Shown: positions 7,400 to 63,800 of the stretch, piece after piece
Layout: the number at the start of each line of letters is the position of its first letter
Numbering within the stretch: position 1 is the first letter of the stretch
Assembly (NCBI RefSeq): GCF_006345805.1
Contig: NC_043009.1
Coordinates: forward strand, 64,542,001-64,606,000
Direction of reading: 5' to 3'
Length of the DNA: 64,000 bases
DNA from: Octopus sinensis
Lineage: Eukaryota
Made by a program: the position numbers and the translations under genes
Notes under the pieces: model-generated
What the model was told of the DNA's origin: nothing
Seen by the model: the letters and a program-made list of their open reading frames with translations, nothing else
The model's database searches: none

Positions 7400-8759
7400 A
7401 ATATTACATCTTACAAACGGCCAGCAAAATCAGGATCCAAACAAGGCGAGTTAAGGCCACGTTTACCTGCAAAAACAAAGTGAAAAATGAATATCAGTGG
7501 AAATATTATTGCCCTCGATATTTGCAAACGTTTAATATTTGTATACATTAAAATTTGTCTGCTTATAAGGCAGTGATCTGGCAGAATCGTTACTGCGCCG
7601 GGTAAAATACTTAGCGGTAGTTCATCCGTCTTAACGTTCTGAGTTCAAATCCCTCCGAGGCTGACTTTGCCTTTCATCCTTTCGGGATCAATGAAATAAT
7701 TACCAGTTGATCACCGTGGTCGATGTAATCGGCTTTACCCCTCCCCTGAAATTGCTGGCCTCGTGCCAAATTTTGAAGCCAATATTTATCTGCTTGTAAT
7801 ATTGTTTGATAAAAAAAAAATATTTGTCAACCGTCATATTGATAAAAACATTTACCTGTTAGCAATATCGTGGATGAAAATATTTATTTACATAAACTTA
7901 TTGATGAAAATATTGCTGATTAAGTTATTCTTCGACATTTGATATGTATTAGTGAATATTTATTTATAAGTAATATTTTTCATAAAAAACATTTTCATGT
8001 AAAATTGTTGTTGAAAATATTTCTGAATATTCAAATTTGCTCACAGCAATTTACGTAGGTACGTAATATAAAATATCGTTCATAGACATATTTCTCAATA
8101 CACATTGTTTTCCATAAAATATTTACTTACATAAATTATTAACAGAAATGCTTATTGTTGTGTCTGTTGTGTCAGTATTTTTAATACAAATGTTCATCAC
8201 TAAATAATAAAATTCTCATGCGTAAAGGACGAAAGGGCCTCGGCGGAATTTGAACGCAGAACGTAAAGACGGACGAAATTCTTCTAATCGTTTCGCTTGG
8301 TCAGCTAATGAACCAACCAGCTCGCCGACCTACCACAACGAAATATAGACTTCAAATTTCGGCTCAAGGCCAGCAATGGATAAGTCGATTACATCGACCT
8401 TAGTGTCCAACTGGTATTTATTTCTATCGACCCAGAATGTACGAAAAGCAAAGCCAGCGTTTGAACTCAGAACGTAAAGGCAGACAAAATGCCACTAAGC
8501 ATTTTGGCCAGCATACTAACAATTCTACCTACTCACCGCCCTACCGCAGCGAAGTATTGATGATAAATATATTTACTTTCATGCAATACTGTTAACAAAA
8601 TATTCATCAATATTTACTGATAAAAATGTTTATCCTGGTTATTTCAATATGTTCTTATCTACAGATAATATTATTCTTGCTCTACGTGTACACTATATTG
8701 GCAATTAATTATACGTTTTAATAATTTTTCGTGTCATTGCATTCAATATATTAGCCGCC

Positions 8760-9020
8760 ACTTAAATATATATTCTTCCTGCATCTCCAATACATTGCAG
8801 CCAAATCTCCAACTAATACCACAATACCGTTTCTCGCGAACGGAACTCAGTATTGAATACCTTAAACAGTGTAGACCTAGACACGCTTTTCCTTTATCAA
8901 TGTCGTCTAACTTCATACAGAGATCATATACTGCCACAGAGTATTAGATACCCACTACTGTTCTATGCTATGGCGTAATCTATGAATGCCTCACTAAAAT
9001 GCTACCGAAACAGCTGTAGT
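8760..9020 (-). mobile_element. Possible decayed CR1/L2-type RT fragment
   Basis: KLDDIDKGKACL followed by frameshifted text resembling LDFSKAFDTV..GI.G. Confidence 0.3.
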
Positions 9021-9034
9021 GAATTTTAACGCTT

Positions 9035-9103
<69 letters not shown>

Positions 9104-9570
9104 CGCACATACAAACACGCACATACATAAGGATCTCCCGTCGTTAAACGACGCATGGGCGTTAGGCAATTTATTACCGAACAACCACACGGATGATTTG
9201 CTTATAGCGATCAAATGTTTGTGTTGCACATAAGCCCACTCCCTCCATCAATTCAACATTATCTGTACAGGTGCACCATGTGCCACATGTCAGATGACGA
9301 AATGATCTCAGAACAACTGCTACTTTTACCAATCCATGAGACACCATAAAACAGTGGTTATATGTCACTGACCTACAAAGTCTCCAATATTACGATTTTA
9401 GTCTTTAAATTCAAAATCTCTTAGGTATTCGACTTATATTTAGGTACTATTTTCGTTTTAGAGCTTAAAGAATTTTGTTTTGGTATATTGGTTCTAGAGA
9501 TATAAGCAATATGATGTTTCATGTAATTGCCAGCGAGATTTTGTGTCTTGGTTAGGGTTTCTACACTTGC

Positions 9571-9659
<89 letters not shown>

Positions 9660-10133
9660 TTGCCATAATCTATGATTGCTCTTGTTCATTCCAAAACCTT
9701 GTCTGACCTAACGAGGTCTGTAATAACAGGAGTTACAACCATGACAGTCCCGTCTTTTTGTGGATACCTAATAGTTGTGGATACCTAATAGTTTTTTCGC
9801 TTAATTGCTTAGCCAGAAACTGGATAGCAATCTCTATTAACACCTTTCAGTGCCTCACTAAATGTTCCAGGGATCAGGACCCTGGCACAAATATTTGTAA
9901 CAAAGTAAACCCTCGTAAACACGTCTAAGGTCCCATTTGTGATAATTACACCAGGCTCCAGAATAAGTCTATCCCCCCCCCCACACACACACACATACGC
10001 ACCTATCAAGATGGTAGACTGTGACTTTTGGCAGATTTGGCTTCTATTTATATTGGCCGAACGACAGCTTAGGAACTTTGTCGTTGACTTGTGATTTATA
10101 TTACCGCTAACATTTTTGTTTTTATTGTACCAT

Positions 10134-10370
10134 ATATATATTTCTTTATTACCTACAAGGGGCTAAACACTCAGGGGACAAACAAGGACAGACAAACGGA
10201 TTAAGTCGATTAAATCGACCCCAGTGCGTAACTGGTACTTAATTTATCGACCCCGAAAGGATGAAAGGCAAAGTCGACCTCGGTGGAATTTGAACTCAGA
10301 ACGTAACGGCAGACGAAATACGGTAACGCATTTCGCCCGGCGTACTAACGTTTCTGCCAGCTCGCCACCC
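10134..10370 (-). mobile_element. SINE family B, 29 nt into the intron after the mucin exon donor
   Basis: Full head-to-tail copy; 12-bp TSD TTATTGTACCAT at 10122-10133 and 10371-10382. Confidence 0.92.
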
Positions 10371-10399
10371 TTATTGTACCATTATATAAACACACTTAC

Positions 10400-11288
10400 A
10401 GCTTGGTGCAGCATTTCCGCTGCCTGTGCCTTGAGTGAAATCCTTGGTCATTCCTGTTTTACCTATCTGAGCACTGGTTGAGACGTCGTAGTCTGTTTGT
10501 TCGTTTGACACTGATTGAAAGTCAGTCGAAAACATGGTCACTGTTTCCGTTGAAACTTCACTGCTGTTGCTTACCGTCGTTTCTTCGGTGTTCTGGTCTT
10601 GGGTAAAATATGAGCTGTTTTCGTTGTTGGTTGACGTGAAGAGGGGACTCGCAGTTGAGCTTCCGTTGTTTGAACTGAAACTTGATTCTGAAATCGGTGA
10701 ACTTCTTGCAGTAACGGTACCAGATATTACGTCTGTGATTCCGGCAGATTTTGTTGTGTCTGATGTATTTGATAAGTGTGTGGTTGATTCTGCTCTGGCG
10801 TTTACATTTGTAGATAAACTATTTGATGATGACCGTTGATTAATTGTTGTCATTGAGAACGAAATGTCAGAGGCAGCTGAAGTCTGTTTATTGTTTGTTG
10901 TAGAGGCTGAACTGTGATCCATCAAAGTTGACTTTTCACTCGTCGCTGATGTCTTTGCATTTCCTGTTGCATAGGTGACGCCACTTGCACCTGTTGTTTC
11001 TCCTCGTGTCACGGCTGTTGAATCCAAAAGAGTGCTTATCAACGTCGATTTCCCGCTTGCTGAGATCTTTGTACTTCCTGTCGAATACGCATCACTACTT
11101 CCGCTGCTTTTTGCGGATGTTGAATCTGAAATGGTACTCGTCAAGGTTGATTTCCCGCCTGTTGCCGAGATCTTTGTACTTCCGGTCGAAGAAATCTGAT
11201 TGCCACCTGTCGTTGTTTCTTTACTTGTTGTTGCTGCTGCTGCTGTTGTTGTTGTTGCTGTTAGTGCTGGTAGTCCGGCTGCTTTTAT

Positions 11289-11338
<50 letters not shown>

Positions 11339-11614
11339 CTGTTGTTGCTGCTGCTTTTGTTGCTGCTGCTGCTGTTGCCGCTGTTGCTGTTGCTGCTGCT
11401 GTTGTTGCTGCTGCTGCTGTTGTTGTTACTGCTGCTTTTGCTGCTGCTTTTGCTGCTGCTGCTGCATTTGTTGCTGCTGTTGTTTTTGCTGCTGCTGTTG
11501 TTGCTGTTGTTGCTGCTGCTTTTGTTGCTGCTGCTGTTTTTGCTGCTGCTGTTGTTGTTGCTGCAGAAATCTTTCCAAATATGCAAATAAGGGTTGTAAC
11601 CAACACAAGGGTCA
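10400..11614 (-). CDS. Internal coding exon (405 codons) of a probably secreted or membrane mucin-like Ala/Thr/Ser-rich glycoprotein
   Basis: Lies in the 414-aa ORF 10371-11615. Acceptor tttcttattttctaatttctttcag|TGACC and donor CCAAGCT|gtaagt; both phase 1; length 1215 = 3x405. Begins xTLVLVTTLICIFGKISA (signal-peptide-like), then an A/T/K tract, then about 290 non-repetitive S/T-rich codons with no stop and with N-x-S/T sequons. Confidence 0.85.
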
Positions 11615-11714
11615 CTGAAAGAAATTAGAAAATAAGAAATAAAGATTAAAATTAAAATTTTAAACATGTATTACATGTGTTACCATTATTATTATTGTTG
11701 ATGTTGTTGTTGTT

Positions 11715-11864
11715 AGGCGGCGAGCTGGCAGAAACGTTAGCACGTCGGGCGAAATGCTTGCTACGTTCTGAGTTCAAATTCCGCCGAGGTCGACTTTGCC
11801 TTTCATCCATTCTGGGTCGATAAATTAAGTACCAGTTACGCACTGGGGTCGATATAATCGACTT
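11715..11864 (+). mobile_element. SINE family B, 100 nt upstream of the mucin exon acceptor, inverted relative to 10134-10370
   Basis: Head plus core with a deletion of about 20 nt. Confidence 0.92.
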
Positions 11865-12293
11865 GTATTTTAAATTTTGACTGCTGTATTCCAAAATGCA
11901 GTCTCTCTCTTTACTCTTTTACTTGTTTCAGTCATTTGACTGCGGCCATGCTGGAGCACCGCCTCTAGTCGAGCAAATCTTTGCGAGCCTAGTACTTATT
12001 CTATTGGACTCTTTTGGCGAACTGCTAAGTTACGGGGACGTAAACAGACCAGTATCGGTTGTCAAGCAATGTTGGAGGGGGGACAAACACAGACACACAA
12101 ACATATACATACACACATACAAATATATACATACATATGTATGATGAGCTTCTTTCAGTTTCCGTCTACCAAATCCACTCACAAGGCTTTTGTCGGCCCG
12201 AGGTGTCACGCAGTGGGACTGAACCAAGAACAATGGGGTTGGTAAGCAAGCTACTTACCACACAGCCGCTCCTGCGCCTAAGGATAGAAAGAC

Positions 12294-12411
12294 GTTTACA
12301 GCACCTAGGTTTCCCAAGCGGTCACCCATCTAAGTACTAACTAGGCTCGACTTTGCTTAACTTCGGTGATCGGACGAGAAGCGGTGTTTTCAAAGTGATA
12401 TGGTTATAAAG
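12294..12411 (-). pseudogene. 5S rRNA pseudogene (full length, about 118 nt)
   Basis: Minus strand reads CATATCACTTTGAAAACACCGCTTCTCGTCCGATCACCGAAGTTAAGCAAAGTCGAGCCTAGTTAGTACTTAGATGGGTGACCGCTTGGGAAACCTAGGTGCTGTAAAC, a recognisable metazoan 5S. Shows CpG-type decay at the 5' end and a box C substitution; single copy, not an array. Confidence 0.9.
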
Positions 12412-12561
12412 TCATCAATCTTATTTTTATTTATTAAATTTTTTTTGTTCTATCAAGTCTTCCTTGTTACTTTAACATCCCGTTGAGAATATTATAATTA
12501 AGTCTTACTTTTTTTATTGTTGTTTTTTTTTTTTTTCATGTAACACCTTTTTAAATATTAA

Positions 12562-16720: not shown

Positions 16721-16839
16721 TCTGAAACGTCCCTTAACGTAAGTGTGATGGTTATACACATCGCATAAAAGAAATTATCACGAAAAGCCTTTCTCATTTT
16801 CGACTCTACAAAGAAACATGAAAGGAATAAATGCATACA

Positions 16840-17640
<801 letters not shown>

Positions 17641-17942
17641 ATATGTATATATATGTATGTATATATAGATACATATATGTCTGTACAAGCACTTAAACAT
17701 ATATATTGATACACACACACAAGAGCACACACACACACACGCACACACACACACATATCTATATATATATATTTAGTCGAACACATTGACCCCAGGACTT
17801 ATCTTTTAAGCCTAATACTTATTCTATCGATCTCTTTTTTTGCCAAACCACCAGGTTTTGGGGACAAAAACATACCGACACCGGTTGTCAAGTGGTGATG
17901 GGGGGCTTCAAACAGAGACACAAAGACACACACACACATAAC

Positions 17943-18008
<66 letters not shown>

Positions 18009-20033
18009 ATTCCGTCTACCAAATCCATTCACAAGGCTTGGTCGACCCAAGGCTATTGTAAAATACACGTTGCCCAAGGTACCATGCAGTAGGATTGAAC
18101 CCGGAACCGGAACCGTGGCTGAGTGATAGAAAGCATGCTTCTTATCACTCAGCCACGCCTGTGCCTACATAGCTATGTATATGTATGTGTCTGTGTGTGT
18201 ATATAAAAGTATATATATATATATATATAGAATATATATATATATGGGTGTGTGTGATTGTGTATAGAAGAATATATTAATAAAAAGAATTCCAACCTTG
18301 TCTGATTTTCACGTTTTATTTACAATCTTATAATGATATATTATAAGATAATATATTATAATTGAATAAAATAAAATGAAATAGTAGAATGTTAAATATT
18401 CATTCTGATTGAACTAGTACTTTCATGCATTGAATTCTGCAATCTTCGGGTTCATGTAGTAGTGTTGACAGTCATGCTTCACAATTTTTGACTGTAGCAA
18501 GATGATTGATTCTGTGCTATAAATACAGCTGGGTAGGCTCCAGAGTGCTAGGTTTTGCAAACTGTATTCTGACCAATCAGTGTGTAGTATCACTCAATTA
18601 CTTAAGCTGATTGGTTGGTTGAGCTGATTGGTTTAGGCGTCACGCTTTGTTGGACATGCCGCCTCCGATACTATCAGCACCAGTACCATCACCACCACCT
18701 CTACCGCAACCACTTCCACCATTATCAACTAGACATCCACCTACCACCTCCACCACCTCCATTACTACTACCTCCATTTCCACAACCACCACCATCACCA
18801 CCACAATCACCGCCGCCCCCATGAGAATACTTTTCAAAATCTTGCCTTATTTCTTAAGATAACACGAGCAATTTTCGTGGGAGTATTGGTCGATTGCTAC
18901 GAGCCCAGTACTTGATGGTCCTTTATCTTATCGACCCCGTGAAAGATTAAAAGCAAGTTTAATTGCGGTATGGTAGGAATTTAGAACGTAAAGAGCCAGA
19001 AGACTTGTTGAATGGCATTTTTACCCGTTCGCCATGAAAACATTTTTGGCTTTCTGCTTATAGGCACAAAGCCTAAAATTTTGGGGAAAAGGGTTGTTGT
19101 TCAACTGGGGTTTATTCTATTGACTCTGAAAATATGAAGCAAAATCTCAGCGGCATTTGTGCTCAGGACGTAAAACCAGAAGAAATGTCGCTAAGCATTT
19201 TGTATGATGCATTTACGATTCCGCCATCTTAACATCAAGGTTTATAGCTAAAACCAAAGCAAGACTGTTCGTTGCTCTTCATTAAGGTCCCTATTTTATA
19301 ACTGGTTTTGTCACAGGGAGAAGGTGAAAGTACACGGTCCTTTTCATGCATAGTAGAAGGAAGAAAAGAGGCTATTGTCAGACTAGAAACCTAGATTGAT
19401 TGCAATAGTCTGGACTGTTAAAGTGAAGACCCAGGTGTAGTTAAATTACGACTAAATTTAGTCTTTCACAGTTTTCAGCCTCTAATTTAGTCGACCCGGG
19501 GTTATGGAAAAAGACAGTTGTCCAAAGTGCAGCTTAATGACATCGAACCTGAAAACACATCCTTGGGAATATAACATCTTAACTACACAACAATCCCTGC
19601 ACCCGTCATTATTTCTTATCTATTATGACCGGAAAAAAATGCAATTCGGATTAGATGCATTGTTGTCCCTCATTTATAACTCTAATCTGATTGATAAAAG
19701 CATGAACGGTATACTTTTCTCATATTTTCCCTATGAGTTTTGTAATATTGTAACCGTGTAATGCAGGTGCAGAGGTAAGATATCAAACCACTTGGGTTCA
19801 CACTGCGCTTAAAGTAGACAATTAAGCACTTCATGAAAATTATGGTTCAGTTTTCCCGTCGTCTGATGTTCGACTGAGGTGTTGTATGTTACAGAAGAAA
19901 GAAGTATTGACACATCTACTTCAGAGATACACACTTAGAAATTACTTTTGTGTGTGATAACAAAAATGCATATCAAATTTGTGGCTTTCAAAACGATCCA
20001 ACATTCATGAACAAACAGTGTATTAATCTTATG

Positions 20034-20065
<32 letters not shown>

Positions 20066-20087
20066 CATGCATACATACATACATACA

Positions 20088-20119
<32 letters not shown>

Positions 20120-20192
20120 CATACATACATACATCATACATACATACATACATACATACATACATACATACATGCATGCATACATACATACA

Positions 20193-20226
<34 letters not shown>

Positions 20227-20282
20227 CACACAGGCATACATACATACATACATACATACATACATACATACATACATACATG

Positions 20283-20314
<32 letters not shown>

Positions 20315-20478
20315 CACACAGGCATACATACATACATACATACATACATACATACATACATGAATGCATGCATACATACATACATACATACATACACACA
20401 TACATACATACATACATACATACATACATACATACATACATACATGCATGCATACATACATACATGCATACATACATA

Positions 20479-21130
20479 CGAAGTCTTATCAATAAGTATC
20501 TCAACTGTTGTCATAGTAACGAAACCAAAGCACGCAGATTGAAGCCACTTGGCACAGATTGACCTTGAATGCTGCTGTGCATGCACACCAAGTTTTAATA
20601 ATCTAGCTCACTTCCGCTGCTCACAGCAATGCTTGGAAGGAACGTGCGTAGAGTGTGATCGTCACATTGACCATGACAAAGAAAGTTGTCATGGAGAGAC
20701 ACCAGTACAGAGACCTGCGCAAATTTGCAGAGAGTGTATGGAGAGGAGTGTATGAGCCGCATTGAAGTGTACGAGGGGTTCAGACGTTTCCAACGTGTAC
20801 GTAAATATGTCGATATTGACGAACGTTCTGAGAGACCCGCAGCCAGAAGAACTGAGAAAAACATCGCAGATGTGAGTGCAACTGTGAGGGGAAATCGTCG
20901 AACCACACCCGTGAGTTATCAGATTATACATCCTCTGATAACTCACGGGTGTGGTTCGACGATTTCCCCTCACAGCTGCACTCACATCTGCGATGTTTTT
21001 CTCAGTTCTTCTGGCTGCGGGTCTCTCAGAACGTTCGTCAGCTGACCAAAAAGACACTCGGGTTTCAGTTGCACACGATCTCCTTAACGATGGAAACTTT
21101 TTGAACACTTTGCGTTGACCTCCTTGTGCC
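20479..21130 (+). mobile_element. mariner remnant (5' TIR plus HTH region) with internal fold-back
   Basis: TA|CGAAGTCTTATCAATAAGTATC terminus; TETCANLQRVYGEECMSRIEVYEGFRRF..DIDERSERP..RTEKN..VRGNRRTT is the mariner transposase N-terminus. Confidence 0.8.
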
Positions 21131-22269: not shown

Positions 22270-22960
22270 ACTCTAGGCACAAGGCCCAAAATTTTTGAGG
22301 GGGCCAGCCGGTTAGATCGACCCCAGTACGCAACTGGTACTTAATTTATCGACCCCGAAAGGATCAAAGCAAAGTCGACCTCGGCGGAATTTGAACTCAG
22401 AACGTAACGGCAGACGAAATACCTATTTCTTTACTACCCACAGGTGGCTAAACCCAGAGGGGACAAACAAGCACAGACAAACGGATTAAGTTGATTACAT
22501 CGACCCCAGTTCGTAACTGGTACTTATTAAATCGAACCCCGAAAGGATGACCTCGGTGGAATTTGAACTCAGAACGTAACAGCAGACAAAATACCGCGGG
22601 CATTTTGCCCGGCGTGCTAACGATTCTGCCAGCTCGCCGGCTTTATAAATATAAATATACTTTTCTAATCTACGCACAAGGCTTGAAATTTTGGGGGAGA
22701 GGCCCAGTCGATTACATAGATCCTAGTATGCAACTGATGCTTACATTTTATCGACCCCGAAGGATGAAAGGCAAAGTCGACCTCGGCGGAATTTGAACTT
22801 AGAATATAACGGCAGACGAAATACCTATTTCTTTACTACCCACAAGGGGCTAAACAAAGAGAGGACAAAGAAGGACAGACAAACGGATTAAGTCGATTAC
22901 ATCGACCCCAGTGCGTAACTGGTAATTAATTTATCGACCCCGAAAGGATGAAAGGTAAAC
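22270..22960 (-). mobile_element. Two SINE family B multimers with two tail types; same layout at 36040-36435(+) and 49232-49630(-)
   Basis: Units joined at GAAATA|GGTATTTC; distal unit ends in ..AAATTT..GGCCTTGTGCCTAGAGTAG. Confidence 0.85.
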
Positions 22961-24552: not shown

Positions 24553-27500
24553 TCCCTGACGCGAGACAGAGGTCCCTCCCTCAGGGAGAACAAAAACAAA
24601 AACAAAAAGTTAAAAGAAGGGAAAAAAGCGCACTGACCACTACTGAAAGACGGTATGCAGATGTGGTGCGCGGAAACCCAACAGGTGGCCAGCTTCACCC
24701 AGATGTGAGAAAGGCGGCAGCTGAACAGCAGTCTTTTTTGTGCATGGCACAAAAAATTGTTCAGCAGCTGACCTGGCTACAAGCACAAAGCTGGAACTAC
24801 CACCACATAAGGCCACCTCCAACAGATGCAGGATGGCCACCACAGACACCAACACCAACACACACACCACAAAAATATTTCTACTGAATGTAGGAGGGCT
24901 GCTGCGCGGAAACTGTAAAAAGAAAATTTCATTCCTGAGAGACCTTGTGACATGCAATCAAGCTATATGCATGGCACTCACAGAAACGCATCTTGAACCC
25001 GATATAGGTGATGCAGAAATACACATGCCGCAATATGCAGTCATACGCACAGATAGAAAAGGGAGGAGCCATGGTGGAGTTGCAATGTACATCCGAGATG
25101 ACCTCACGCCCCAGGTCCTGCTGTCATATTCAAACTCAGTATGTGAAAACAAATTGTACACATAAGACAACTGAATATCGTCATATGCACTACATATCGC
25201 CCACCAGACGCCCCAAAACACTCAGGCATGTTTGAAGACTGCCTAACAAAAATAGGAGAAGTCCTCACCAACCTTGAACAGCACAACAGTGTATTCTTCA
25301 TGGGTGACTTTAACCTCCCCAATGTGGAATGGCCTGGGGGGCAGATGCTCCCAGGGATGACACACCATCAGCAGGCACAGGTGGAGTCCCTGCTCCATCT
25401 CACAAATACCTCTTTCATGGAGCAAATAGTTCTGCAACCAACAAGGGCAGATAATATACTGGATCTCTGCTTTACAAACAATATGGATATTATCCATAAT
25501 GTTAATGTGATGCCGACAATGATCTCGGATCACAACATAATAGAGCTGTCTATGTATGGAACAAAAGCCCCCGCAGACAACACAGCCTATACGAAGCACC
25601 CACCATCTCTCCAACTTAAACTTTCATAAAGCCAACTGGAAGTCGATTGAGAAAGAGATCCTCAAACAGGATTGGCCTGAATGTCTCTCCACACGGACAT
25701 AAACATGAAACACAAACACTTCATGTCCATAATACAAGCCATATGTGACAATATGTCCCATGTGCAGGGCCAGCACACACAAGAATAAAAACAGGATCCC
25801 TAGAGAAAGGAGGATTCTTATGAGACGACGGACAAGGATTGCAAACCGCCTGAGCAAGCACACCAAAAGTGGTGAGAAGTCTCGGCTCGAAAGAATGCTA
25901 ATGGAAACTGAGAAAAGTCTACATCAGTCCCATGAAAAGGAGAGAGCAGATAAAGAAGCTTGGGTAATAGAAAATATAAAATCAAACCCTAAAGCTTTCT
26001 TTAAGTTTGCCAAAGAGACAGCCACAGTGCACCAGAGAATAGGACCTCTCTTCCAAAAAGATGGCTCTCTCACAGGAATCCCACGAGGATAAGTGAAATA
26101 CTGAACGAACAGTTCCAAAGTGTGTTCACTACACCTCTAGGACACAGGCAAGTAAACAACCCAGAAGAATTCTTTGCCACTTACCAGCGGCCAAAGAGAC
26201 AAAAATTGAGTACATCAACATCGAAGAAGATGATATCACACTAGCCATTGATGAGATTGACACAAACTCAGCTGCTGGACCTGATGGATTCCCAGCGATC
26301 CTTCTCAAATCGTGCAAACGAGCCCTTGCAAAACCGCTACAGCTTCTTTTTCAGAGCTTTCTTGCAAGTGGTAAGCTCCCAGTCAAACTGAAAGAGGGGG
26401 TAATATGCCCTATCCATAAGGGAGGTAGCAGAGCAGATGCTAAAAATTATAGGCCTATCTCTCTGACCTCACACATCAGCAAAGTCATGGAACGAATAGT
26501 CCGTAAGAAACTAATCATGTTCCTTGAAGAAAATGACTTACTGTCTGACACCCAGCATGGATTTCGACCAGGTAGAGCTGCCTAACACAGCTCCTGCAGC
26601 ACTATGACTGGGTGTTGAAACAGCTACTAAATGGCTCAAATGTGGATGTAATATATCTTGACTTTGCAAAAGCCTTTGATAAAGTCGACCATGGTATGAT
26701 CTGTCATAAACTGCGTGGTCTCGGCATAGGCGGGAAACTTGGAGAGTGGCTGCACAACTTCCTAAAAGACAGAAAACAGGCAGTTGTGAGCAATGGAGCC
26801 ACCTCCAGGGAAACGCAAATAACAAGCGGTGTCCCACAGGGCACTGTCTTGGGGCCACTGATGTTCATAGTGGCCCTTTCAGACATGCCTTCAGTTGCTA
26901 CGATGACCACCCTTGCTAGCTATGCAGATGACACAAAGGTCTCCCACGCAATACAGAACCCTGAAAATATTGCGCATCTGCAACATGAGCTGGACACAAT
27001 ATACAGGTGGGCTGAGGACAACAACATGCAGTTTAATGCAGGTAAGTTCCAGGCCCTGCGCTACTGGCACACAAAGGTAAATGACGTGAAGACTGGATAC
27101 ACTGGCCCAGGAAGAATTGCAATCCCTGAGTCAAAATCAGTGCGTGACCTGGGCATTTACATGAGCAATGATGCATCTTTCCAAATGCATATTGCTAATC
27201 TGGTGATAAAATGCAGACGGCTAGCTGGATGGATTCTCCGAACTTTCAGAACAAGAGAGAAGGAGACACTGATGGTCCTATGGAAAACATTTGTCCTCAG
27301 CCGCTTGGACTACTGCTCCCAACTTTGTCACCACACAATATAAAAAAAACAGCAGAACTCGAAGCAACTCAGAGAAGCTACACAAAGAAAATCGTCTCAA
27401 TGCAAAATGTCAGCTACTGGGAAAGACTGAAGGTATTAAACCTCTTCTCCCTGGAGCGGAGGCGGAGAGATATGCAGTAATATACATCTGGAAAATCCTG

Positions 27501-27908
27501 GAGGGTCTTATCCCAAACTTTGGCATTCAAAGTTACTCCAACCGCAGAACGGGGCGCCGCTGCGTGGTGCCAAGGATTCCAACATCACCATCAAAATACA
27601 GGTCCAGATACTGCAACAGCTTGGGTTTCAGAGGACCACAGCTTTTCAACATCCTCCCTAAATGCCTGAGAGACTTACATGGTGTGGATGTGGGTTTCTT
27701 TAAAACTAAACTGGATCTCTTCTTGTTGGAAGTCCCAGATGAACCTACCTCACGACAGGAGACGCGGATGCAGGCAGCAGCATCGAACTCCCTTGTTGAT
27801 CAAGTGCCACGTATCAGAGGTGGATTCACAAACTAGTGTGGCTCATTCAGCGGTGGTGCCCCAGCATGGCCGCGGCCTTCGGGCTAAAACATTTTTAAGG
27901 ATTTAAGG

Positions 27909-43363: not shown

Positions 43364-43699
43364 ACATGTATATATATATATACGCACACACAATGGTAGT
43401 CTCTCGTAGACTGAGAAAGACTGTTCTGCCATTTCTAGCTGAACGACCTCTGACACAAACGATTTGTTCAGAGTGATCAAATGTCTGTGCTGTTCAGTAG
43501 CTCAGTGCCGCCATCAAATCGACATTTCTTGAACAGGTGCACGACGTGCTGCACATCAGGTGTCGAAGTCGTCGCACAGCAACGTGGGATGAAGTGTTTT
43601 GCGCAAGAGCACAACGCACCATCCAGGGCACAACTTGAAACTACGGACTCGCGATGGTCAGTGCAACATCCGAACCGCTTGGCCATACACCCTCACAGA

Positions 43700-44443
43700 T
43701 AAACATATACATACATGCATATACACATACATACATACATACATGCATGCATGCATACATACATACATACGTACATACATACATACATGCATATACACAT
43801 ACATACGTACATACATACATACATGCATGCATACATGCATACATACATACATACATATATATGTACGTACGTACGTAAGAGCATAGGTACATACATACGT
43901 ACATGCATGCATGCATGCATGCATACATACACACATACATGCATGCATGCATGCATACATACATACATACATACATACATACCTACATACATACATGCAT
44001 GCATGCATACATACATACATACATACATACATACATACATACATGCATGCATGCATACATACACACATACATGCATGCATGCATGCATACATACATACAT
44101 ACATACATACCTACATACATACATGCATGCATGCATACATACATACATACATACATACATACATACATGCATGCATGCATGCATGCATACATACACACAT
44201 ACATTCATACATACATACATACATACATACATACATACATACATGCATGCATGCATGCATGCATACATACATACATACATTCATACATACATTCATACAT
44301 ACATACATACATACATACATACATACATGCATGCATGCATGCATACATGCATACATGCATACATACATGCATGCATGCATGCATGCATACATACATACAT
44401 ACATACATTCATACATACATACATACATACATACATACATACA

Positions 44444-44478
<35 letters not shown>
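43700..44478. repeat. Compound (TACA)n/(TGCA)n array; similar arrays at 20035-20478, 23478-23628, 42302-42477, 63060-63550
   Basis: Read directly; source of the MYVC/HTYI ORFs. Confidence 0.98.
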
Positions 44479-44886
44479 TGTCCTGGTTATCACTTTAAAC
44501 TGCCTCTGATAGTGGAGCCCTAATTCGGGATTCCTGGAATTCGAAGACTGAAACCCCCACTTTAGCCTATATTGTTCTTATCTCAACTCTGCCTCGGTGT
44601 AATAGTAGCTACCAATGTCTAAGCTATTGATTAATCAGCATGTAAATATGAACCTCAGGAAGTAAGGGGCTCTAAGCTGTTGTCATAGCAACCTTCTAGA
44701 AGAAGGACACTCTAATGCAAAGCCTGTAGGTTCACATGATTTCAGGTCATCTCGCATCGATTTATCACTAGGTACGAACCACGTAGCCTCAGAGACTGTT
44801 ACTCATGTTGTACAAGCGTTTCTCATTATAATCCAATGATATACAGGTGTGTTTTTATCGAGGGCTTATTTGTCATTTATCATTTC

Positions 44887-45670
44887 TATTTCTTTATTGC
44901 CCACAAGGGGCTAAACATAGAGGGGACAAACAAGGACAGACAAAGTGATTAAGCCGATTATATCGACACCAGTGCGTAACTGGTACTTAAATTATTGACC
45001 CCGAAAGGATGAAAGGTAAAGTCGACCTCGGCGGAATTTGAACTCAGAACGTAACGGCAGACGAAATACCCATTTCTTTACTGTCCACAAGGGGCTACAC
45101 ACAGAGGGGACAAACAAGGACAGACAAACGGTTAAGTCGATTACATCGACCCCAGTGCGTAACTGGTACTTTTATTTATCGACCCCGAAAGAATGAAAGG
45201 CAAAGTCGACCTCGGCGGAATTTGAACTCAGAACGTAAAGACAGCCGAAATACCCATTTTTTTACTATCCACAAGGGGCTACACACAGAGGGGACAAACA
45301 AGGACAGACAAACGGATTAAGTCGATTACATCGACCCCAGTGCATAACTGGTACTTAATTTATCGACCCCGAAAGAATGAAAGGCTAAGTCGACCTCGGC
45401 AGAATTTGAACTCGGAACGTAGCGGCAGACGAAATACCTATTTCTTTATTACCCACAAGGGGCTAAACACAGAGGGGACAAACAAGGACAGACATAGGTA
45501 TTAAGTCGATTACATCGACCCCAGTGCATAACTGGTACTTAATTTATCGACCCCGAAAGAATGAAAGGCTAAGTCAACTTCGGCGGAATTTGAACTCGGA
45601 ACGTAGCGGCAGACGAAATAACGCTAAGTATTTCGCCCGGCGTGCTAACGTTTCTGCCAGCTCGCCGCCT
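44887..45670 (-). mobile_element. SINE family B concatemer: one head plus four tandem units of about 184 bp
   Basis: Units start at about 44887, 45071, 45254 and 45439; single A-box head at 45621-45670. Confidence 0.92.
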
Positions 45671-46583
45671 TTGTCAATTATCATTCCATCTACTAAACGT
45701 CCAGCACAATGAAACTGTGATGACGTTTACCGATCTAATCAGCTGGAAACGCACAGGTACGAGGCAGTGTAATTGAATAGTCGTCCGAGAGGTCATGGCC
45801 GGAAAATCAGAAATACCTATTTCTTTATTACCCACAAGGGGCTAAACATAGAGGGAACAAACAAGGACAGACATAGGTATTAAGTCGATTACATCGACCC
45901 CAGTGCGTAACTGGTACTTAATTTATCGACCCCGAAAGGATGAAAGGCAAAGTCGACCTCGGCGGAATTTGAACTCACAACGTAACGGCAGATGAAATAC
46001 CTCTATGCATTTCGCCCGACGTGCTAACGTTTCTGCCAGCTACCGTTGACGAAGATAAATCAGAAGCCGCCTACAATTTCCTATGAAGATGGAACCACCA
46101 TAATAAATGTATGTATGAAGAGCAACGAGGCTCACCTGAAGCATTGCGTTATAAGAAAGCAGAGGAATGCAGTAACGAATTATTATAACCCAGAAATCGC
46201 TGTGTTTCCTTATGGTAACTTCTGGTTCGTTAAAAAATTCGTTACTGCTCTCCTTTGTCGAGGGGAAATGGGTCATTTACCCGAAATATGCAAGCAGTAA
46301 ATAAGTCATTAACTCTTTCCCAGCACGCACTATTTCTTGTCTATTGCCTTTGTCGCTCATTCGAGTTTATGGACAATGTGTAAATAGTTGCGCCTATTTA
46401 TGTGTGTTCAGGTGTATCTGCGAATTTTGTGCACCATACGAAGAAGATTATTTTCCCGCTCAACGAGCTTCCGATAGCTCTTATCAGACATTGGTATGCG
46501 TGTTGTGTATGCGTGTGTGTATGTGCGTAAATATGAACGTGCGTTTGTAAATCTGTATCTACTACCCTTTAAATACATACTAC

Positions 46584-46629
<46 letters not shown>

Positions 46630-46648
46630 TATATTAATACATACATAT

Positions 46649-46748
46649 NNNNNNNNNNNNNNNNNNNNNNNNNNNNNNNNNNNNNNNNNNNNNNNNNNNN
46701 NNNNNNNNNNNNNNNNNNNNNNNNNNNNNNNNNNNNNNNNNNNNNNNN
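46649..46748. other. Assembly gap (100 N)
   Basis: Run of N next to a (TA)n tract. Confidence 1.
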
Positions 46749-46949
46749 AAAGAATTGTGTTTAAGAGTGACCCACATAATGTCGGAATTGTTTTAGATAA
46801 TAGCACAAAGAAATATTGTCGTCAAAGGAACCCTAATTAGAAGTTAGTATATATTAATAAATTCTTCAGCCACTTCCGTACTTGAAGATTTTAGTAAACA
46901 ATATCAGTCTTCTTAAATCAAGCATATCTCTATTGGTGATAAGCATCAC

Positions 46950-49124: not shown

Positions 49125-49794
49125 GTGATTGTCAAACGGGGTTCCCTATGGCCCTTGTGGGTCCGCATAAGATTTTATTGTTAAAATTTATGTGCAGTAA
49201 ATTCCTTATATTTCTACAATACACAAAATATCCTTTTCTACTCTAGGCACAAGGCCCGAAATTTTGGGGGAGAGGGGCAGACGATTAGATCGACCTCAAT
49301 CCGCAACTGGTACTTGATTTATCGGGCCCGAAAAGATGAAAGGCAAAGTCGACCTCGGCGGAATTTGAACTCGGAACGTAGCGGCTGACGAAATACCTAT
49401 TTCTTTATTGTCCACAAGGGGCTAAACATAGAGGGGACAAACAAGTACAGACAAACGGATTAAGTCGATTACATTGACCCCAGTGAGTCACTGGTACTTA
49501 ATTTATCGATCCCGAAAGGATGAAAGGTAAATTCCACCTCGGCGGAATTTGAACTCAAAATGCAGCGGCAGACGAAATACCGCTAAGCCTTTCGCCCGGC
49601 GTGCTAACGTTTCTGCCAGCTCACCGCCTTAGAACAGAAAGATATTGTAACAATGTTTTTTTTATATAATTCCTACTAATATTTAATGATAAAAATATAA
49701 TGGAATTTTTTAAACACTGAATGGTTATGAGGGTCCACCTGAGCAAAATAGAGATCAAAGAGGTCTATAGGTAAAAAAATGGTTGGGAACCATT
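49125..49794. mobile_element. Possible hAT-type MITE interrupted by a SINE dimer
   Basis: Left end CAGTGATTGTCAAAC; right end (reverse complement) AATGGTTCCCAACC; resembles CAGTGGTTCCCAAC-type TIRs. Confidence 0.35.
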
Positions 49795-58499: not shown

Positions 58500-60870
58500 C
58501 TGCCTTTAAAAAAAGCGAAGGACATATTTGATAATGTTGCTCTGGATACAATATGTCTGATTGAAAGAAAGGATAGTCACGAAGCTGACATTTTATAGAA
58601 ACCAATTGATATGTATGTTCAAAAGGACTTTGGAAGGTCAGACTGATATACCAATTTGCTACAGCAGGGACAAATCTTGTTGCCAAATCACCGAGATGGC
58701 AAGAAAATACAGGCCCATTGCTTGCCTATACATTATGTACAGTCTGTACACAAGTTGCCTCAACCAATTCCTCCAGGACCATTGTGAGTCGAACAACATT
58801 GTGACTGATGAGCAGGTTGGTGGAAAGTAGGGAGTGTAGAGATGTGCCGAACAACTTTTAATAAACAAAGCTGTACAGTTTGAAGTAAGATAACAACATA
58901 CACACCTTGTGACAATATGGCTTAACTATAAGAAGGCATACGACTCTCTCCCTCATTCATGGCTGGTGAATTGCTTACATCTGGCAAAGGTACCCACTAC
59001 CTTAATTACTGCTATAGAGAGACTCACAAAGACATGGACAACAATTCTTACCCTTACAACTGAGAACGGAATAATTGTTTCTGAGGGTATAGGCATTTCA
59101 AAGGGAATATTCCAGGAAGATAGTCTTTCTGTACTTCTTTTAATTTTAGCACTGAATCCATTATCGTTCCTACTGCAGAAAAGAAATGGTTACATGCTAG
59201 GTTCTTCAACTGCTAGAAATATCAATGTAACTCATAATTTCTTTGTACACAACCTGAAGTCGTCTTTTATGCTATAAGTGTTAACAATGCCAAAAAAAAA
59301 AAAATTAATAAAATAAACAACTGGAATTAACAACATTTTCTGCTGATATAGGCATGGAATCTGGCCAAAAGAAATGTTAATATTTGGTTATAGAACGAAA
59401 AAAGTCAGTCCTCCAAGCCCAAAACCTGTGAATCAACAGCCTCTATCTCTCCTGTTTCATACAAAGAATGTTACAAGTACCTAGGCATAGGCGAAAATGT
59501 ATCATATAAAGACACTGTGAATAACGATAGAGTGACCCGAGAATATTACACCAGCCTTAGGAAAATAGAACAATCGAAACTTTCCTCTCGAAACAAAACA
59601 ATATCCCACAATGCATTTGTAGTACCAGTGCTGATCCCACCATTTGATATATTTGATTGGTCTGTAGAGGAAATCCATTCCGTAGATTTCAAATCCCGCA
59701 AAATCCTGACTACAACTGGGAACTTCCGCAGAAACAGTGATGTTGACAGGCTCTACATAAGAAGAAATGAAAGTGGTAGAGGCCCCGAGATCAGTGCAGA
59801 CGGCCTTCGAATGCTAAACAACAGGAACAAGAATAAATATATAAATGCAGCGCTGAAAAGTGAAGTGTGCAACAGTGTACGAGTTGGCAGTGAACTCCTC
59901 AAGAAACACTCTCTTCCTGATGATTTCCTATACAGCCCCAAAACAGTTGGGCTCTCTTACCCCAGAGAAGACCTGGATGGAAAGCACTCAGCATACAAGA
60001 AAAAAAAGACTACGCACGGGTATGTTGCCCGGAAGCTTGAAGAGGACAGTAGAATTGACACGAAGCGCAGCCTTTCTTGGACACAAGACCACTGTATCAC
60101 ATCACACTTTGAGGGCTATGCGTTTGCAATCCAATCCAGGAAATACCTGGTAAACAAAAGAAACGGTGACGCTCTTGTAATCCCAAGGTACAACCACATG
60201 TGTAGGCTACGTCATGTTTCTGTGGAAGACATCACGCATGTGATTAACAGCTGTCTTAAAATGACGTCACGGTACTGCCTTCCTATGCAGCACAACATTG
60301 TTGCTAAAACAATTTACAATGCCACCCGCAAAAACGACTGTCCTGAAATAAACTTAGAAAATCCCTCTGTTATGGAAATACATTAATAAATACCAAACTC
60401 AAGAAATACTGGTGGAATATTCTCATCAAAACCTCTGTCAAATGTAAACATAACAGGCCGGGTATTGTTGTTTGGGACAGAGGCGCAAATTTATGTACCA
60501 TCATAGAGGTCAGCTGCCCTGCAGATATAAATATCTCTTTGAGAATCAAAAGAAAAGGAGGATATCTATGGACAACTGCTTCGAAACCTCCAGCTTATCT
60601 ATCCAGACTATGAATTCATATTCATAGTCCAATAATAATTGAAGCACTAGGTTTTGTTAGTAAATGCTTAAAGGAGAATCTGGATAAACTGGGATTTTCA
60701 GAACGAGAAACTGAGCGGCTGATTCATACATTACAAGTGCAATCTGTGAGTGGAACAGTAAAAATATGCAAGACTTTTCTAAAGTTCCAAATGTGAATTT
60801 GTGTTAAAGATATTTCGAAGATGGGCCTTGTATCTGTGTAGGAAACCGGCCCCCTCCTCAGTGGAAGATT
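58500..60870 (+). mobile_element. R4/Dong-clade non-LTR retrotransposon (RT, CCHC, RLE), 5'-truncated and frameshifted
   Basis: WLNYKKAYDSLPHSWL, GIFQEDSLS, decayed catalytic FVHN (for FMDD), RLYIRRNESGRG, SHFEGYAFAIQ, IEVSCPAD; 3' UTR hairpin gggcc..ggccc. Confidence 0.88.
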
Positions 60871-63800
60871 TATAATAATTAAAAAAATAGAAGAAACACA
60901 TACATACATGTGTGTGTGTGTGTGCATGTATTGATGTTTGTCCTTCTGCCATTTTTGGTGTGTGCGTATTTGTATGGGAATCCATCTTATACTACAGACA
61001 TAAAGTATGCATTACGCAAGAAGTATAAGATTTTAGCTGTCTAAAGACATGCACTGAGAACATTTTTAAAAATGCCTTTCCTTCCAACGTTTTTGTCGGA
61101 AAAAATAGTGAGATTATCTAAACCGGTTTCGATCCGTTTGGCACTCGATTCCAAAATCTAGTTCTCCACATCTGTCCACTGAAAAATATAACTTCATAAC
61201 TATGTATATAAGTCTATCGTATAGTGATTACGTGATCGACCAAACTATCGGATGTTACACTTCGCTGGTCACGATGTGCTTTGCATCGTTGTTAGCTTTC
61301 AAATGCTGCCACTCCACAGGCCAACGTTCTCTCCGATGGGAAGATTAGTCCATCTCAGGGATAATCAGTTACAGCTGAATCGAGTGGGGCAAAGTGAAAT
61401 GAAGTGTTTTGATCAAGAACACAACGCGCCACTCAGTCTGGGAATCGAACACACGACCTAGTGATCGTGAGTGCAACTCCCTAATCAGCAGGCTACGCAC
61501 CTTCAGGTATAGGTACACTAACATACATAGGTGTGTATGAATGTATATATGCATGCAGGTATGTGGTTATGTATGTTATTTTAAATGTGAAACTTCCGGT
61601 TTCGTCAATTTAGATTTGGGTGCAAATGAGAAGTTTTGATTATCACATTTTGCACACTAAACAACGAGCAATCTCTTTGAAAGGCGACACTGATTTTCTC
61701 TTTATTACCATTCTTAAGGCTTTTAGAGTTACAGAGGTGGTTCTATTGTTAATGAGGCTTATTTCAGACGTGGTTCTTACGAGGTATAAACCTGTCGCCT
61801 TAATTCTTTTGCCCTTTCCCATCTTTCGGCTATATTTGTGTTATCTGACGTACGCACGGCTTAATGTCTTCGTCTTGCCTGGTAAATATCTTGGTAAGTG
61901 GTTAGTCGGCATGTTTCTTTGCATTTCTGTTTTGTTTTTCTTAAGTAAGGAGAATATTTTTTGTTTACTTTTGTGGTATCGCTAGCGAGTTGTGCTTCTC
62001 TTGGCGTTGTTGCACATATATGTCTAGACTGATTATGAATTATTTATATACTGGCTCCAACTGAGTTAGACCATTGCATCTATCTTGTCTTTATATATAA
62101 AGGATGCATATATCAATCTTTCCGATTAATACTATTATTGATAAGGCGACGAGCCGGCAGAACCGTAAGCAAGCCGGAGAAATTGCTTATTGGCATTTCG
62201 TCCGTCTTTATGTTCTAAGCTCAAATTCAGCCAAGGCTAACTTTGCCTTTCATTTTTTCGGGGTCAATAAAATAAGTACCAGTTGCCGGCCTTGTGCCAA
62301 AATTTGAAAACAATATCATTATCGATAAGACAGCAAACTGGCAGAATCGAAAGCGCGTCGGACAAATTGCTTATCGGCATTTCGTACCTCTTTACTCTGA
62401 TTTCAAATTCCGCCGAGGTCGACTTTGTCTTTCATTCTTTCGGGGTCGATAAAATAAGTACCAAGTGGACACTAGGATCGATGTAATCGATTTACCCCCC
62501 TCCCCAGACTTGCAGGTGTTGTGCTAAAATTTGAAACCGATATTATTGATGTCAATATGGCAGCGAACTAGCAGAATCGTAAGCGCGTCGGACAAATTGC
62601 TTAGAGGAAAATTCCGGCTTTACGTTCTGAATTCCAATTCTGTCTTAGCTTACTTTACCTTTCGTTCTTTCGGGATCGATAAACTAAGCCTCTGTTGAGC
62701 ACTGTAGGTGATGTAATCGACTGACCCCTTCTCCCCGAAAACTTTAGTCCTACGCCAATAGGCATCGTTGATATTTTTTCTGCTATAGAAATTAGACAAC
62801 ATTTTAGAACGAATCTGGTGGCCTGACACGTTCAAGCGCTTGCATAAATCCGTATAAGGTAGCTGTCAACTCGTAGACAAGTATGGTCGTTGATGGCAAA
62901 TTGTCTTATCCTAGATATTAAAGATAATGGCTGTCAGCAATGCCTTGTACATAGGTAGATAGACAAATAAATAGATACTTATGTATACACGTGCATACGT
63001 AATTATGCGCATGCGCATGCGCACATATGCAAATAGTTCTGTATACACAAAAATGGTTTGTGCAAACATACGTATGTACATATATGCGTTCATATAATAC
63101 ATACATACATGCATACATACATACATGCATGCATACATACATACATACATGCATACATACATACATGTATACATACATACATACATACATGTCAGCATGC
63201 ATGCGTACATACATGCATACGTACATACATACATATGCTTATATATATATATACATGTATACATACATACATACATGAATACATACATGCATACATACAT
63301 ACATGCATACATACATACATGAATACATACATACATGAATACATACATACATGCATACATACATGCATACATATTTGCATACATACATACATAATACATG
63401 CATACATGCATACATGCATGAATACATATGTACATACATACATACATACATACATGCATACATACATACATGCATACATACATGCATACATACATACATA
63501 CATACATGCATACATACATGCATACATACATACATACATACATACATTTATGCATAATATGCGGACACAATCGAAAAAGACATCAGCAAAAAATATCGAA
63601 AACGAAACCCTGTCTGTATTTTATACAAATCTTATCGACGATAACCTAACTTATTGATTTCTAATGTAGATAAAAAGCAAAGCGGTTCGCTGGCAGAATC
63701 GGTAGCATGCTGGATGAAATGCTTAGCAGCCTTCTGTCTGTGTCTATGTTCTGAGTTCGAATTCCGCCAAGGTCGACTTTCCCTTTCATTCCTTTCGGGG

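What the first reader, a model, noticed from the sequence alone, without database searches (positions are those of the whole stretch)
10134..11864. Stop-free 3n exon tightly bracketed by inverted SINEs: candidate circRNA with an endless (rolling-circle) ORF
Seen: the 1,215-nt exon is phase 1/1, divisible by 3 and has no in-frame stop. Opposite-orientation family B SINEs lie 29 nt past the donor and 100 nt before the acceptor and could pair over about 150 nt. Joining donor to acceptor gives ..AGC T|TG ACC.. (Leu-Thr), keeps the frame, re-creates the hydrophobic signal-like segment, and the circle has four in-frame ATGs. Known: flanking inverted SINEs (Alu) drive back-splicing, long single exons circularise readily, and stop-free 3n circles can be translated in rolling fashion. 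Inference: the locus could make a circRNA encoding a repetitive mucin polymer; the SINE duplex could also be an ADAR substrate or promote skipping of this symmetric exon. Caveat: SINE density is high, so inverted neighbours can arise by chance.
Basis: partly seen in the sequence, partly recalled or inferred. Interest (0 to 1): 0.75.

Follow-up and report, generated by a model that had tools for sequence, protein, structure and literature searches.

The report
Octopus exon flanked by inverted SINEs
A real, long, stop-free coding exon of an orphan serine/threonine-rich Octopus sinensis gene sits between two opposite-facing SINE copies that could pair as RNA, but nothing shows that it forms a circular RNA, and the "endless" reading frame is automatic for any exon of this type.

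Summary
The sequence observations all hold. The exon at 10400-11614 (minus strand) is 1,215 nt (3n), has no in-frame stop and has four in-frame ATGs. It lies between GTAAGT and a strong polypyrimidine-CAG. Opposite-orientation copies of one SINE family lie 29 nt and 100 nt away and pair over about 143 bp, also in a fold of a 5-kb model pre-mRNA.

The window is Octopus sinensis CM016871.1:64542001-64606000. NCBI annotates part of the exon as XP_029644250.1. That model confirms the donor, its phase and a terminal exon at 7466-7411. It starts at the first internal ATG (10922), so the acceptor and the 5' 57% of the exon are unsupported by any public protein. Coding periodicity continues upstream of that ATG with no ATG available, which argues for an upstream exon.

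- A stop-free 3n circle follows automatically from any phase-symmetric coding exon.
- Inverted SINE pairs are very common in octopus.
- The only octopus survey found 296 low-level circRNAs on this assembly and attributes the scarcity to ADAR.

The most likely outcome is ordinary linear splicing with an ADAR-edited intronic duplex, and at most minor back-splicing. The protein is proline-poor and matches no Pfam family, so "mucin" is a loose label.

The parts
10400..11614 (-). Candidate internal coding exon, 1,215 nt, phase 1 at the donor (annotated) and phase 1 at the acceptor (inferred). It encodes a hydrophobic start, an Ala/Thr/Lys triplet-repeat tract and a Ser/Thr-rich tract with in-frame units of about 34-38 aa.
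10398..10399 (-). GT of the 5' splice site (AGCT|gtaagt). It is used in NCBI model XP_029644250.1, where T|GT forms the Cys codon with the terminal exon.
11615..11646 (-). Putative 3' splice site: AG at 11616-11615, preceded by a 30-nt tract with 83% pyrimidines and a ctaat branch-like motif. It is not covered by any annotation.
11574..11612 (-). Hydrophobic segment TLVLVTTLICIFG (Kyte-Doolittle mean 2.43), followed by KISA|A. It reads like the core and cleavage region of a signal peptide whose Met and charged start would lie in an upstream exon.
   Evidence: the signal-peptide reading is an inference
11225..11564 (-). Imperfect triplet repeat (GCA/ACA/AAA on the coding strand) encoding the Ala/Thr/Lys tract. 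It has only 2.9% T, so its openness carries little weight.
10920..10922 (-). ATG used as the start codon by NCBI model XP_029644250.1 (192 aa). It is the first in-frame ATG of the exon.
10134..10370 (-). Full-length SINE copy (element sense on the minus strand, the same as the gene) in the downstream intron, ending 29 nt from the donor.
10122..10133 (.). Target-site duplication TTATTGTACCAT, left copy.
10371..10382 (.). Target-site duplication TTATTGTACCAT, right copy.
11715..11864 (+). Second copy of the same SINE family (element sense on the plus strand, antisense to the gene), 100 nt upstream of the putative acceptor. It has an 18-nt internal deletion, lacks the last ~68 nt and has no detectable target-site duplication.
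7467..10399 (-). Annotated intron (2,933 nt) between this exon and the terminal coding exon. It also holds SINE copies at 8365-8541 and 7575-7735, which pair with each other in the model fold (131 bp).
7411..7466 (-). Terminal coding exon (..GT AAA CGT .. TTG TAA) encoding C-KRGLNSPCLDPDFAGRL, with the stop at 7413-7411.
12509..12539 (-). Weak candidate for the missing first coding exon: ATG + MKKKKNNNKK + A|, donor gtaaga. It would make an ATG with the exon's TG. It lies in a poly-A tract and is one of 14 pattern matches in 28 kb.
   Evidence: speculative

Best explanation
This is an ordinary phase-symmetric coding exon of a lineage-specific, low-complexity gene of Octopus sinensis (the locus of XP_029644250.1). 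The product is probably secreted and is rich in Ser, Thr and Ala. The two flanks of the exon each acquired a copy of one abundant SINE family, in opposite orientations. The downstream copy is a clean retroposition with a target-site duplication. The upstream copy is truncated.

Shown: the exon, the donor, the terminal exon, the two SINEs and their complementarity.

Inferred: the exon is internal and a short upstream exon supplies the Met. In that case both SINEs lie in one pre-mRNA and can form a duplex of about 143 bp that loops out the 1.35-kb exon segment.

Inferred from published octopus data: the main outcome is normal linear splicing, with the intronic duplex hyper-edited and unwound by ADAR. 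Back-splicing is at most a minor by-product. The endless frame is an automatic result of exon symmetry, not a designed feature.
For: Exon reality:
- Only one of three frames is open, and the ORF is bounded within 3 and 9 codons of the splice motifs.
- 0 of 2,000 shuffles reach the observed open length, and the period-3 signal is 18.8.
- Internal repeat spacings of 102, 105 and 114 nt are all multiples of 3.

Donor, phase and terminal exon: XP_029644250.1 is 100% identical and maps to 10922-10400 plus 7466-7411.

Internal status:
- The 99 codons upstream of the annotated ATG are open only in this frame (0, 4 and 3 stops in the three frames).
- Their period-3 signal (10.1) equals that of the annotated CDS (9.7).
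- No in-frame ATG exists between the TAA at 11627-11625 and position 10922, so an upstream exon must supply the start.

Duplex: -271 kcal/mol, with 143 bp kept in the minimum-energy folds of 1.8 and 5.07 kb.

Ordinariness:
- This family has 19 loci covering 6.6% of the window.
- SINEs make up 11.6% of the O. vulgaris genome (PMC13282606).
- Octopus has an exceptionally high fraction of loci forming long dsRNA and over a million hyper-edited sites (PMC5625713).
- Editing is mostly in introns and 3'UTRs, and circRNAs are few and low (PMC9699675).
Against: - No RNA evidence of any kind was available here.
- The acceptor at 11614 and the first 231 codons appear in no predicted protein in the public collections.
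- No convincing upstream exon was found.
- A 143-bp duplex lying 30 and 100 nt from the splice sites is the geometry that, in mammalian minigenes (my own knowledge, not tested here), is enough to drive circularisation. Back-splicing could therefore be more than minor in a tissue with low ADAR.
Confidence: 0.55

Rival explanations
1. The SINE duplex drives back-splicing of the exon into a 1,215-nt circRNA at a meaningful level. Ribosomes start at one of the four ATGs and go round the stop-free circle, making a concatemeric Ser/Thr-rich protein.
For: - All the sequence prerequisites are present: 3n length, no stop, four ATGs and a frame-preserving junction.
- The cross-exon duplex is the strongest and closest pairing.
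- Translation of endless ORFs on circles is documented in transfection assays, running from 1.5 to more than 5 rounds (PMC11724312).
Against: - The prerequisites are automatic for any symmetric coding exon.
- The exon's internal status is unproven.
- Octopus circRNAs are scarce and low, which the authors attribute to ADAR.
- No initiation element could be tested, and the ATG contexts are unremarkable.
- The hydrophobic segment is 13 residues and would be internal, 175 or more residues after any start, so secretion as a mucin polymer does not follow.
- My estimates: a detectable circle about 0.15; meaningful rolling translation about 0.02.
Confidence: 0.12
2. The NCBI model is essentially right. 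Transcription starts inside or just upstream of this exon, downstream of the 11715-11864 SINE, and translation starts at ATG 10922. The exon is then a first exon, the upstream SINE is not in the RNA, no duplex forms and no back-splicing is possible.
For: - XP_029644250.1 begins at 10922 and its name does not mark it as partial.
- No public protein contains the exon's first 231 codons.
- No credible upstream exon was found.
- The triplet-repeat third is nearly stop-free by composition alone.
Against: - The coding-type periodicity and the single open frame continue for 99 non-repeat codons upstream of 10922.
- The repeat units straddle the annotated start.
- The frame opens exactly at a strong polypyrimidine-AG and begins with a hydrophobic stretch typical of a signal peptide.
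- Read mapping through a 340-nt triplet repeat is a plausible reason for a truncated model (my inference).
Confidence: 0.25
3. This is not a functional gene at all. The ORF is a decaying minisatellite or triplet-repeat tract with a spurious gene model.
For: - It is an orphan: one protein in 1.84 billion representatives, with no Pfam family.
- The composition is of very low complexity.
- A third of the exon is a triplet repeat.
Against: - 273 non-repeat codons are open in one frame only, with 0 of 2,000 shuffles matching.
- Consensus splice motifs lie at both ORF ends.
- The NCBI model splices the exon in frame to a distinct terminal exon with a stop codon.
Confidence: 0.07

Closest known systems
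Exons circularised through flanking inverted Alu or other SINE repeats in mammals (the inverted-Alu type of circRNA biogenesis)
   Same: Opposite-orientation copies of one SINE family lie in the two flanks, close to the splice sites. The exon is a long single exon. Cross-exon pairing is stronger than the within-intron alternatives.
   Different: No back-splice evidence exists. The upstream splice site is unverified. The host is an octopus, where circRNAs are reported as few and low. The upstream repeat is a truncated 150-nt copy.
circRNAs with an endless ORF translated in rolling-circle fashion (for example circNFIB and synthetic circles; review PMC11724312)
   Same: The circle length is a multiple of 3, there is no in-frame stop, and in-frame AUGs are present.
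   Different: In the known cases the circle and the product were detected experimentally. Here only the arithmetic is met, and it is met by every phase-symmetric coding exon.
ADAR hyper-editing substrates formed by inverted repeats in one pre-mRNA (Porath et al. 2017, PMC5625713)
   Same: A long, nearly perfect intramolecular duplex (103 nt at 96% plus 42 nt at 93%) formed by two SINE copies 1.35 kb apart. The species group is one with exceptionally high hyper-editing.
   Different: Editing was not observed here. It also requires that both arms are transcribed together, which is unproven.
Secreted mucin-like or Ser/Thr-rich low-complexity proteins
   Same: Ser+Thr is 39% overall and 44% in the C-terminal tract, with tandem in-frame repeat units and a signal-peptide-like hydrophobic start.
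   Different: Proline is only 1%. There is no Pfam domain and no homologue anywhere. The NCBI name "serine-rich adhesin for platelets-like" most likely reflects composition only.

Membership tests
Inverted-repeat-driven circRNA exon | A functional 5' splice site downstream of the exon | tested here: met
   AGCT|gtaagt is used in XP_029644250.1 and joins in phase 1 to the exon at 7466.
Inverted-repeat-driven circRNA exon | A functional 3' splice site upstream, meaning the exon is not the first exon | tested here: inconclusive
   A strong polypyrimidine-CAG sits at the ORF opening, and coding signal runs upstream of the annotated ATG. No annotation or public protein covers it.
Inverted-repeat-driven circRNA exon | Reverse-complementary sequences in both flanking introns, with cross-exon pairing favoured over within-intron pairing | tested here: met
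   103 nt at 96% plus 42 nt at 93%. The duplex is -271 kcal/mol, against -202 and -182 for the competitors within the modelled pre-mRNA. 143 bp are kept in the 5-kb minimum-energy fold.
Inverted-repeat-driven circRNA exon | Back-splice junction reads or an RNase R-resistant product | not testable with these tools
   No octopus RNA data are reachable. The junction 21-mer is absent from the window DNA, so it would be a specific probe.
circRNA with an endless ORF under rolling translation | Circle length divisible by 3, no in-frame stop, an in-frame AUG | tested here: met
   1,215 nt, 0 stops over two laps, 4 ATGs. This holds only if the acceptor is as proposed, and it is automatic for a symmetric coding exon.
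circRNA with an endless ORF under rolling translation | Evidence of cap-independent initiation and of the concatemeric product | not testable with these tools
   This needs polysome or ribosome profiling, or mass spectrometry.
ADAR hyper-editing substrate | A long, nearly perfect duplex between inverted repeats | tested here: met
ADAR hyper-editing substrate | Both arms in one transcript, and clustered A-to-G mismatches in RNA | not testable with these tools
   This depends on the transcription start site and on RNA-seq.
Mucin (Pro/Thr/Ser domain protein) | Ser/Thr-rich tandem repeats | tested here: met
   T 22.8%, S 16.6%, repeat units spaced 102-114 nt.
Mucin (Pro/Thr/Ser domain protein) | Proline-rich composition, or recognised mucin-associated domains | tested here: not met
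   P 1.0%; no Pfam family at E<=1.
SINE (short non-autonomous retroposon) | Many dispersed copies and target-site duplications | tested here: met
   19 loci in 64 kb. A 12-nt target-site duplication flanks 10134-10370; none was found for 11715-11864.
SINE (short non-autonomous retroposon) | A head derived from a Pol III RNA (tRNA, 5S or 7SL) | tested here: inconclusive
   There is no ARAGORN or Rfam hit on either copy. A B-box-like GAGTTCAAATTCC is seen by eye.

The most novel reading that the evidence does not exclude
In some octopus tissue with low ADAR activity, the SINE duplex makes this exon a major circRNA. Rolling translation of the circle then yields a concatemer of 405-residue Ser/Thr/Ala-rich units punctuated by short hydrophobic segments. 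That would be a SINE-created, lineage-specific way of producing a very large repetitive glycoprotein from a 1.2-kb template.
Probability: 0.02. Interest if true: 0.7.

Novelty: new member of a known kind. Interest (0 to 1): 0.18.

Why it matters
If a circle were made and translated, it would be the first invertebrate case of a SINE-driven circRNA with an endless ORF giving a repetitive secreted-type protein. It would also show that young SINE insertions can create such products.

As it stands, the locus is mainly useful in three ways:
- It is a clean, specific test case. The back-splice 21-mer is unique in the window, there are two defined SINE arms, and the downstream insertion is clearly bounded by a target-site duplication. 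It can be used to ask how the abundant inverted SINE pairs of octopus introns divide between ADAR editing and back-splicing.
- It flags XP_029644250.1 as probably truncated at its 5' end.
- It is a reminder that a stop-free 3n circle carries no information for a phase-symmetric coding exon.

Tried and rejected
1. Homology for the whole exon found nothing, because the candidate list was saturated by low-complexity words. The non-repeat part found only XP_029644250.1. The first 45 residues found nothing. The result is no orthologue, no paralogue and no transcript-derived protein to confirm the acceptor.

2. Pfam gave no family.

3. tblastn of the hydrophobic start, the Ser/Thr tract and the terminal exon against the window found no paralogue.

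4. A pattern search for a first coding exon (ATG, 0-25 codons, phase 1, GT[AG]AG) over 28 kb upstream gave 14 matches. Only 12539-12509 (MKKKKNNNKK) is suggestive. It lies in a poly-A tract and cannot be validated.

5. Rfam and ARAGORN on the SINE copies gave no tRNA-like hit.

6. The held supplement text of the octopus circRNA survey (PMC9699675) contains no circRNA coordinates. This gene's stop-codon coordinate is absent from the held tables, which are partly truncated. A search for the accession in the literature found nothing.

7. I did not scan the metagenome, prokaryote or viral collections for the back-splice junction. They hold no octopus RNA, so a negative result would mean nothing.

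8. I considered within-intron pairing as a competitor that would block circularisation, and rejected it. In the 5-kb fold, the two other downstream copies pair with each other and leave the cross-exon duplex intact.

Full report
**Where the window comes from.** A protein search with the non-repeat part of the exon returned one protein, P0001 = XP_029644250.1, "serine-rich adhesin for platelets-like [Octopus sinensis]", 192 aa and 100% identical. Its encoding contig is CM016871.1 of assembly GCA_006345805.1. The fetched locus matches the window base for base over 20,922 nt. Window coordinate p therefore equals CM016871.1 position 64542000 + p, and the gene lies on the minus strand.

**Check of the observation.**
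- The segment 10400..11614 (minus) is 1,215 nt.
- The frame starting at the third base has no stop, while the other two frames have 16 and 11.
- Two laps of the circle stay open, and the join reads ..GNAAPS-L-TLVLVTTLICI.. .
- There are four in-frame ATGs, at 10922, 10853, 10535 and 10451.
- The genomic open frame runs from 11624 to the stop at 10373-10371. That is 3 codons beyond the proposed acceptor and 9 beyond the donor.
- The acceptor is a CAG preceded by 30 nt with 83% pyrimidines, and the donor is GTAAGT.
- The SINE at 10134-10370 is flanked by the 12-nt duplication TTATTGTACCAT.
- The second copy is at 11715-11864.
- The distances to the donor and acceptor are 29 and 100 nt.
- The arms are 103 nt at 96% and 42 nt at 93%, separated by an 18-20-nt deletion in the upstream copy.

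**Is the exon real?** Yes, very probably.
- In the 821-nt non-repeat part, 0 of 2,000 dinucleotide shuffles reach the observed 273 open codons. The period-3 signal is 18.8 times background, against a shuffle maximum of 4.8.
- Internal repeat units are spaced 102, 105 and 114 nt, all multiples of three.
- The triplet-repeat third (11225-11564) has only 2.9% T on the coding strand. It has a 25% chance of being open in a given frame, so it adds little.
- The NCBI protein maps to 10922-10400. It continues as T|GT AAA CGT .. TAA in a terminal exon at 7466-7411, behind a ..tttttgcag acceptor.

**Is the exon internal?** This is the weak point.
- The NCBI coding sequence starts at the first in-frame ATG of the exon. 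Nothing in 5.8 billion protein clusters or 1.84 billion representatives contains the 231 codons upstream of it.
- Against the NCBI start: the 99 non-repeat codons just upstream of that ATG are open only in this frame (0, 4 and 3 stops). Their period-3 signal (10.1) equals that of the annotated part (9.7).
- The repeat units straddle the annotated start.
- There is no in-frame ATG between the TAA at 11627-11625 and 10922.
- If those codons are translated, the start must come from an upstream exon spliced to 11614.
- The exon then begins with TLVLVTTLICIFG-KISA. I read this as the core and cleavage region of a signal peptide, which is an inference.
- A pattern search gave one suggestive but unverifiable first exon at 12539-12509 (MKKKKNNNKK, then A|TG).

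**The SINE pair.**
- This family has 19 loci covering 6.6% of the window.
- The downstream copy is full length and lies in the sense orientation of the gene. The upstream copy is antisense, carries an internal deletion, lacks its last ~68 nt and has no target-site duplication.
- As RNA, the two pair with -271 kcal/mol.
- Minimum-energy folds of 10100-11900, and of a 5,074-nt model pre-mRNA (12540 to 7467), both keep 143 bp between them.
- The two further copies in the downstream intron (8365-8541 and 7575-7735) pair with each other over 131 bp and do not compete.
- The geometry is therefore favourable for looping out the exon, provided the upstream copy is transcribed.

**Chance.** With SINE copies placed at random at the window's density, a 1,215-nt segment is bracketed within 100 nt on both sides by inverted copies in about 4 of 10,000 trials. 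That is rare for a single exon. With my rough estimate of a couple of hundred thousand exons, tens of cases per genome are expected. There is no sign of selection for the arrangement.

**What it most likely does.**
- The endless frame carries no information. Any coding exon with the same phase at both ends has a length divisible by three and no in-frame stop, so its circle is open by construction.
- What matters is whether a circle is made and translated.
- The one octopus survey used total RNA from 18 tissues mapped on this same assembly. It reports 296 high-confidence circRNAs among 25,335 genes, at overall low levels, with most seen in a single tissue. It attributes the scarcity to ADAR melting intronic duplexes (PMC9699675).
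- Octopus has over a million hyper-edited sites and an exceptionally high fraction of loci able to form long, nearly perfect dsRNA, mostly from inverted repeats (PMC5625713).
- SINEs make up 11.6% of the O. vulgaris genome (PMC13282606).
- The best-supported mechanism is therefore linear splicing of exon to terminal exon, with the intronic duplex edited and unwound by ADAR and back-splicing a minor side reaction.
- Rolling translation of endless ORFs is documented mainly in transfection assays (PMC11724312). That review also notes that first exons cannot circularise.
- A circle-encoded product would start at an internal Met and meet the 13-residue hydrophobic stretch only after 175 or more residues. 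A secreted mucin polymer does not follow.

**Naming the protein.** It has T 22.8%, A 20.8%, S 16.6% and P 1.0%. It has no Pfam family and no relative anywhere. It is an orphan low-complexity protein. "Mucin-like" is a loose label, and the NCBI name most likely reflects composition only.

**Verdict.**
- The interpretation cannot be tested here and is, on priors, unlikely in its strong form.
- My estimates are: a detectable circle about 0.15, and meaningful rolling translation about 0.02.
- The arrangement is a new instance of a well-known kind, an exon flanked by inverted SINEs.
- The decisive data are public RNA-seq mapped on this very assembly.

Noticed in passing
window 12293-12411 (-), with 11896-12283 (-): A full-length 5S rRNA match (97.8 bits, model positions 1-120) is the only one in the window. 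It runs without a T-run terminator straight into a copy of another abundant SINE family, one that I read by eye as having a tRNA-like head. It could be a 5S pseudogene next to a SINE, a chimeric retrocopy or a 5S-headed SINE. It would lie in the putative upstream intron of the gene.
   Followed up: partly
window 44887-45670; also 22306-22959 and 49279-49629: The same SINE family as at the exon forms head-to-tail arrays here, with about four units of ~184 nt at 44887-45670 and partial-plus-full dimers elsewhere. The element seems to amplify as a tandem, satellite-like repeat as well as by dispersal.
   Followed up: partly
window 10920-11219 (-): The NCBI model XP_029644250.1 probably starts too far downstream. 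Coding periodicity and the single open frame continue at least 99 codons upstream of its ATG.
   Followed up: yes
window 11221-11667 (-): An alternative-frame ORF of 148 aa starts at an ATG inside the putative intron. It opens with a hydrophobic stretch (MFKILILIFISYFLISFS) and runs through the triplet repeat as Ser/Asn-rich sequence. It is probably a by-product of AT-rich intron sequence plus a T-poor repeat.
   Followed up: no
window 24740-27836 (+) and 58909-60386 (+): Broken ORFs that look like a LINE. By eye there is a reverse-transcriptase-like YADD motif in the ORF at 26612-27343. They were not searched.
   Followed up: no
window about 46550-46750: A run of unknown bases, seen as a string of X in an ORF translation. 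This is an assembly gap.
   Followed up: no
window 19935-20586, 43641-44523, 62911-63657, 16818-17709: Microsatellite or minisatellite tracts (of the CATA/CATG and similar type) give long spurious ORFs on both strands, such as MYVCMYVC.. and IHTYIHTY... They show how easily ORF length alone misleads in this genome.
   Followed up: no
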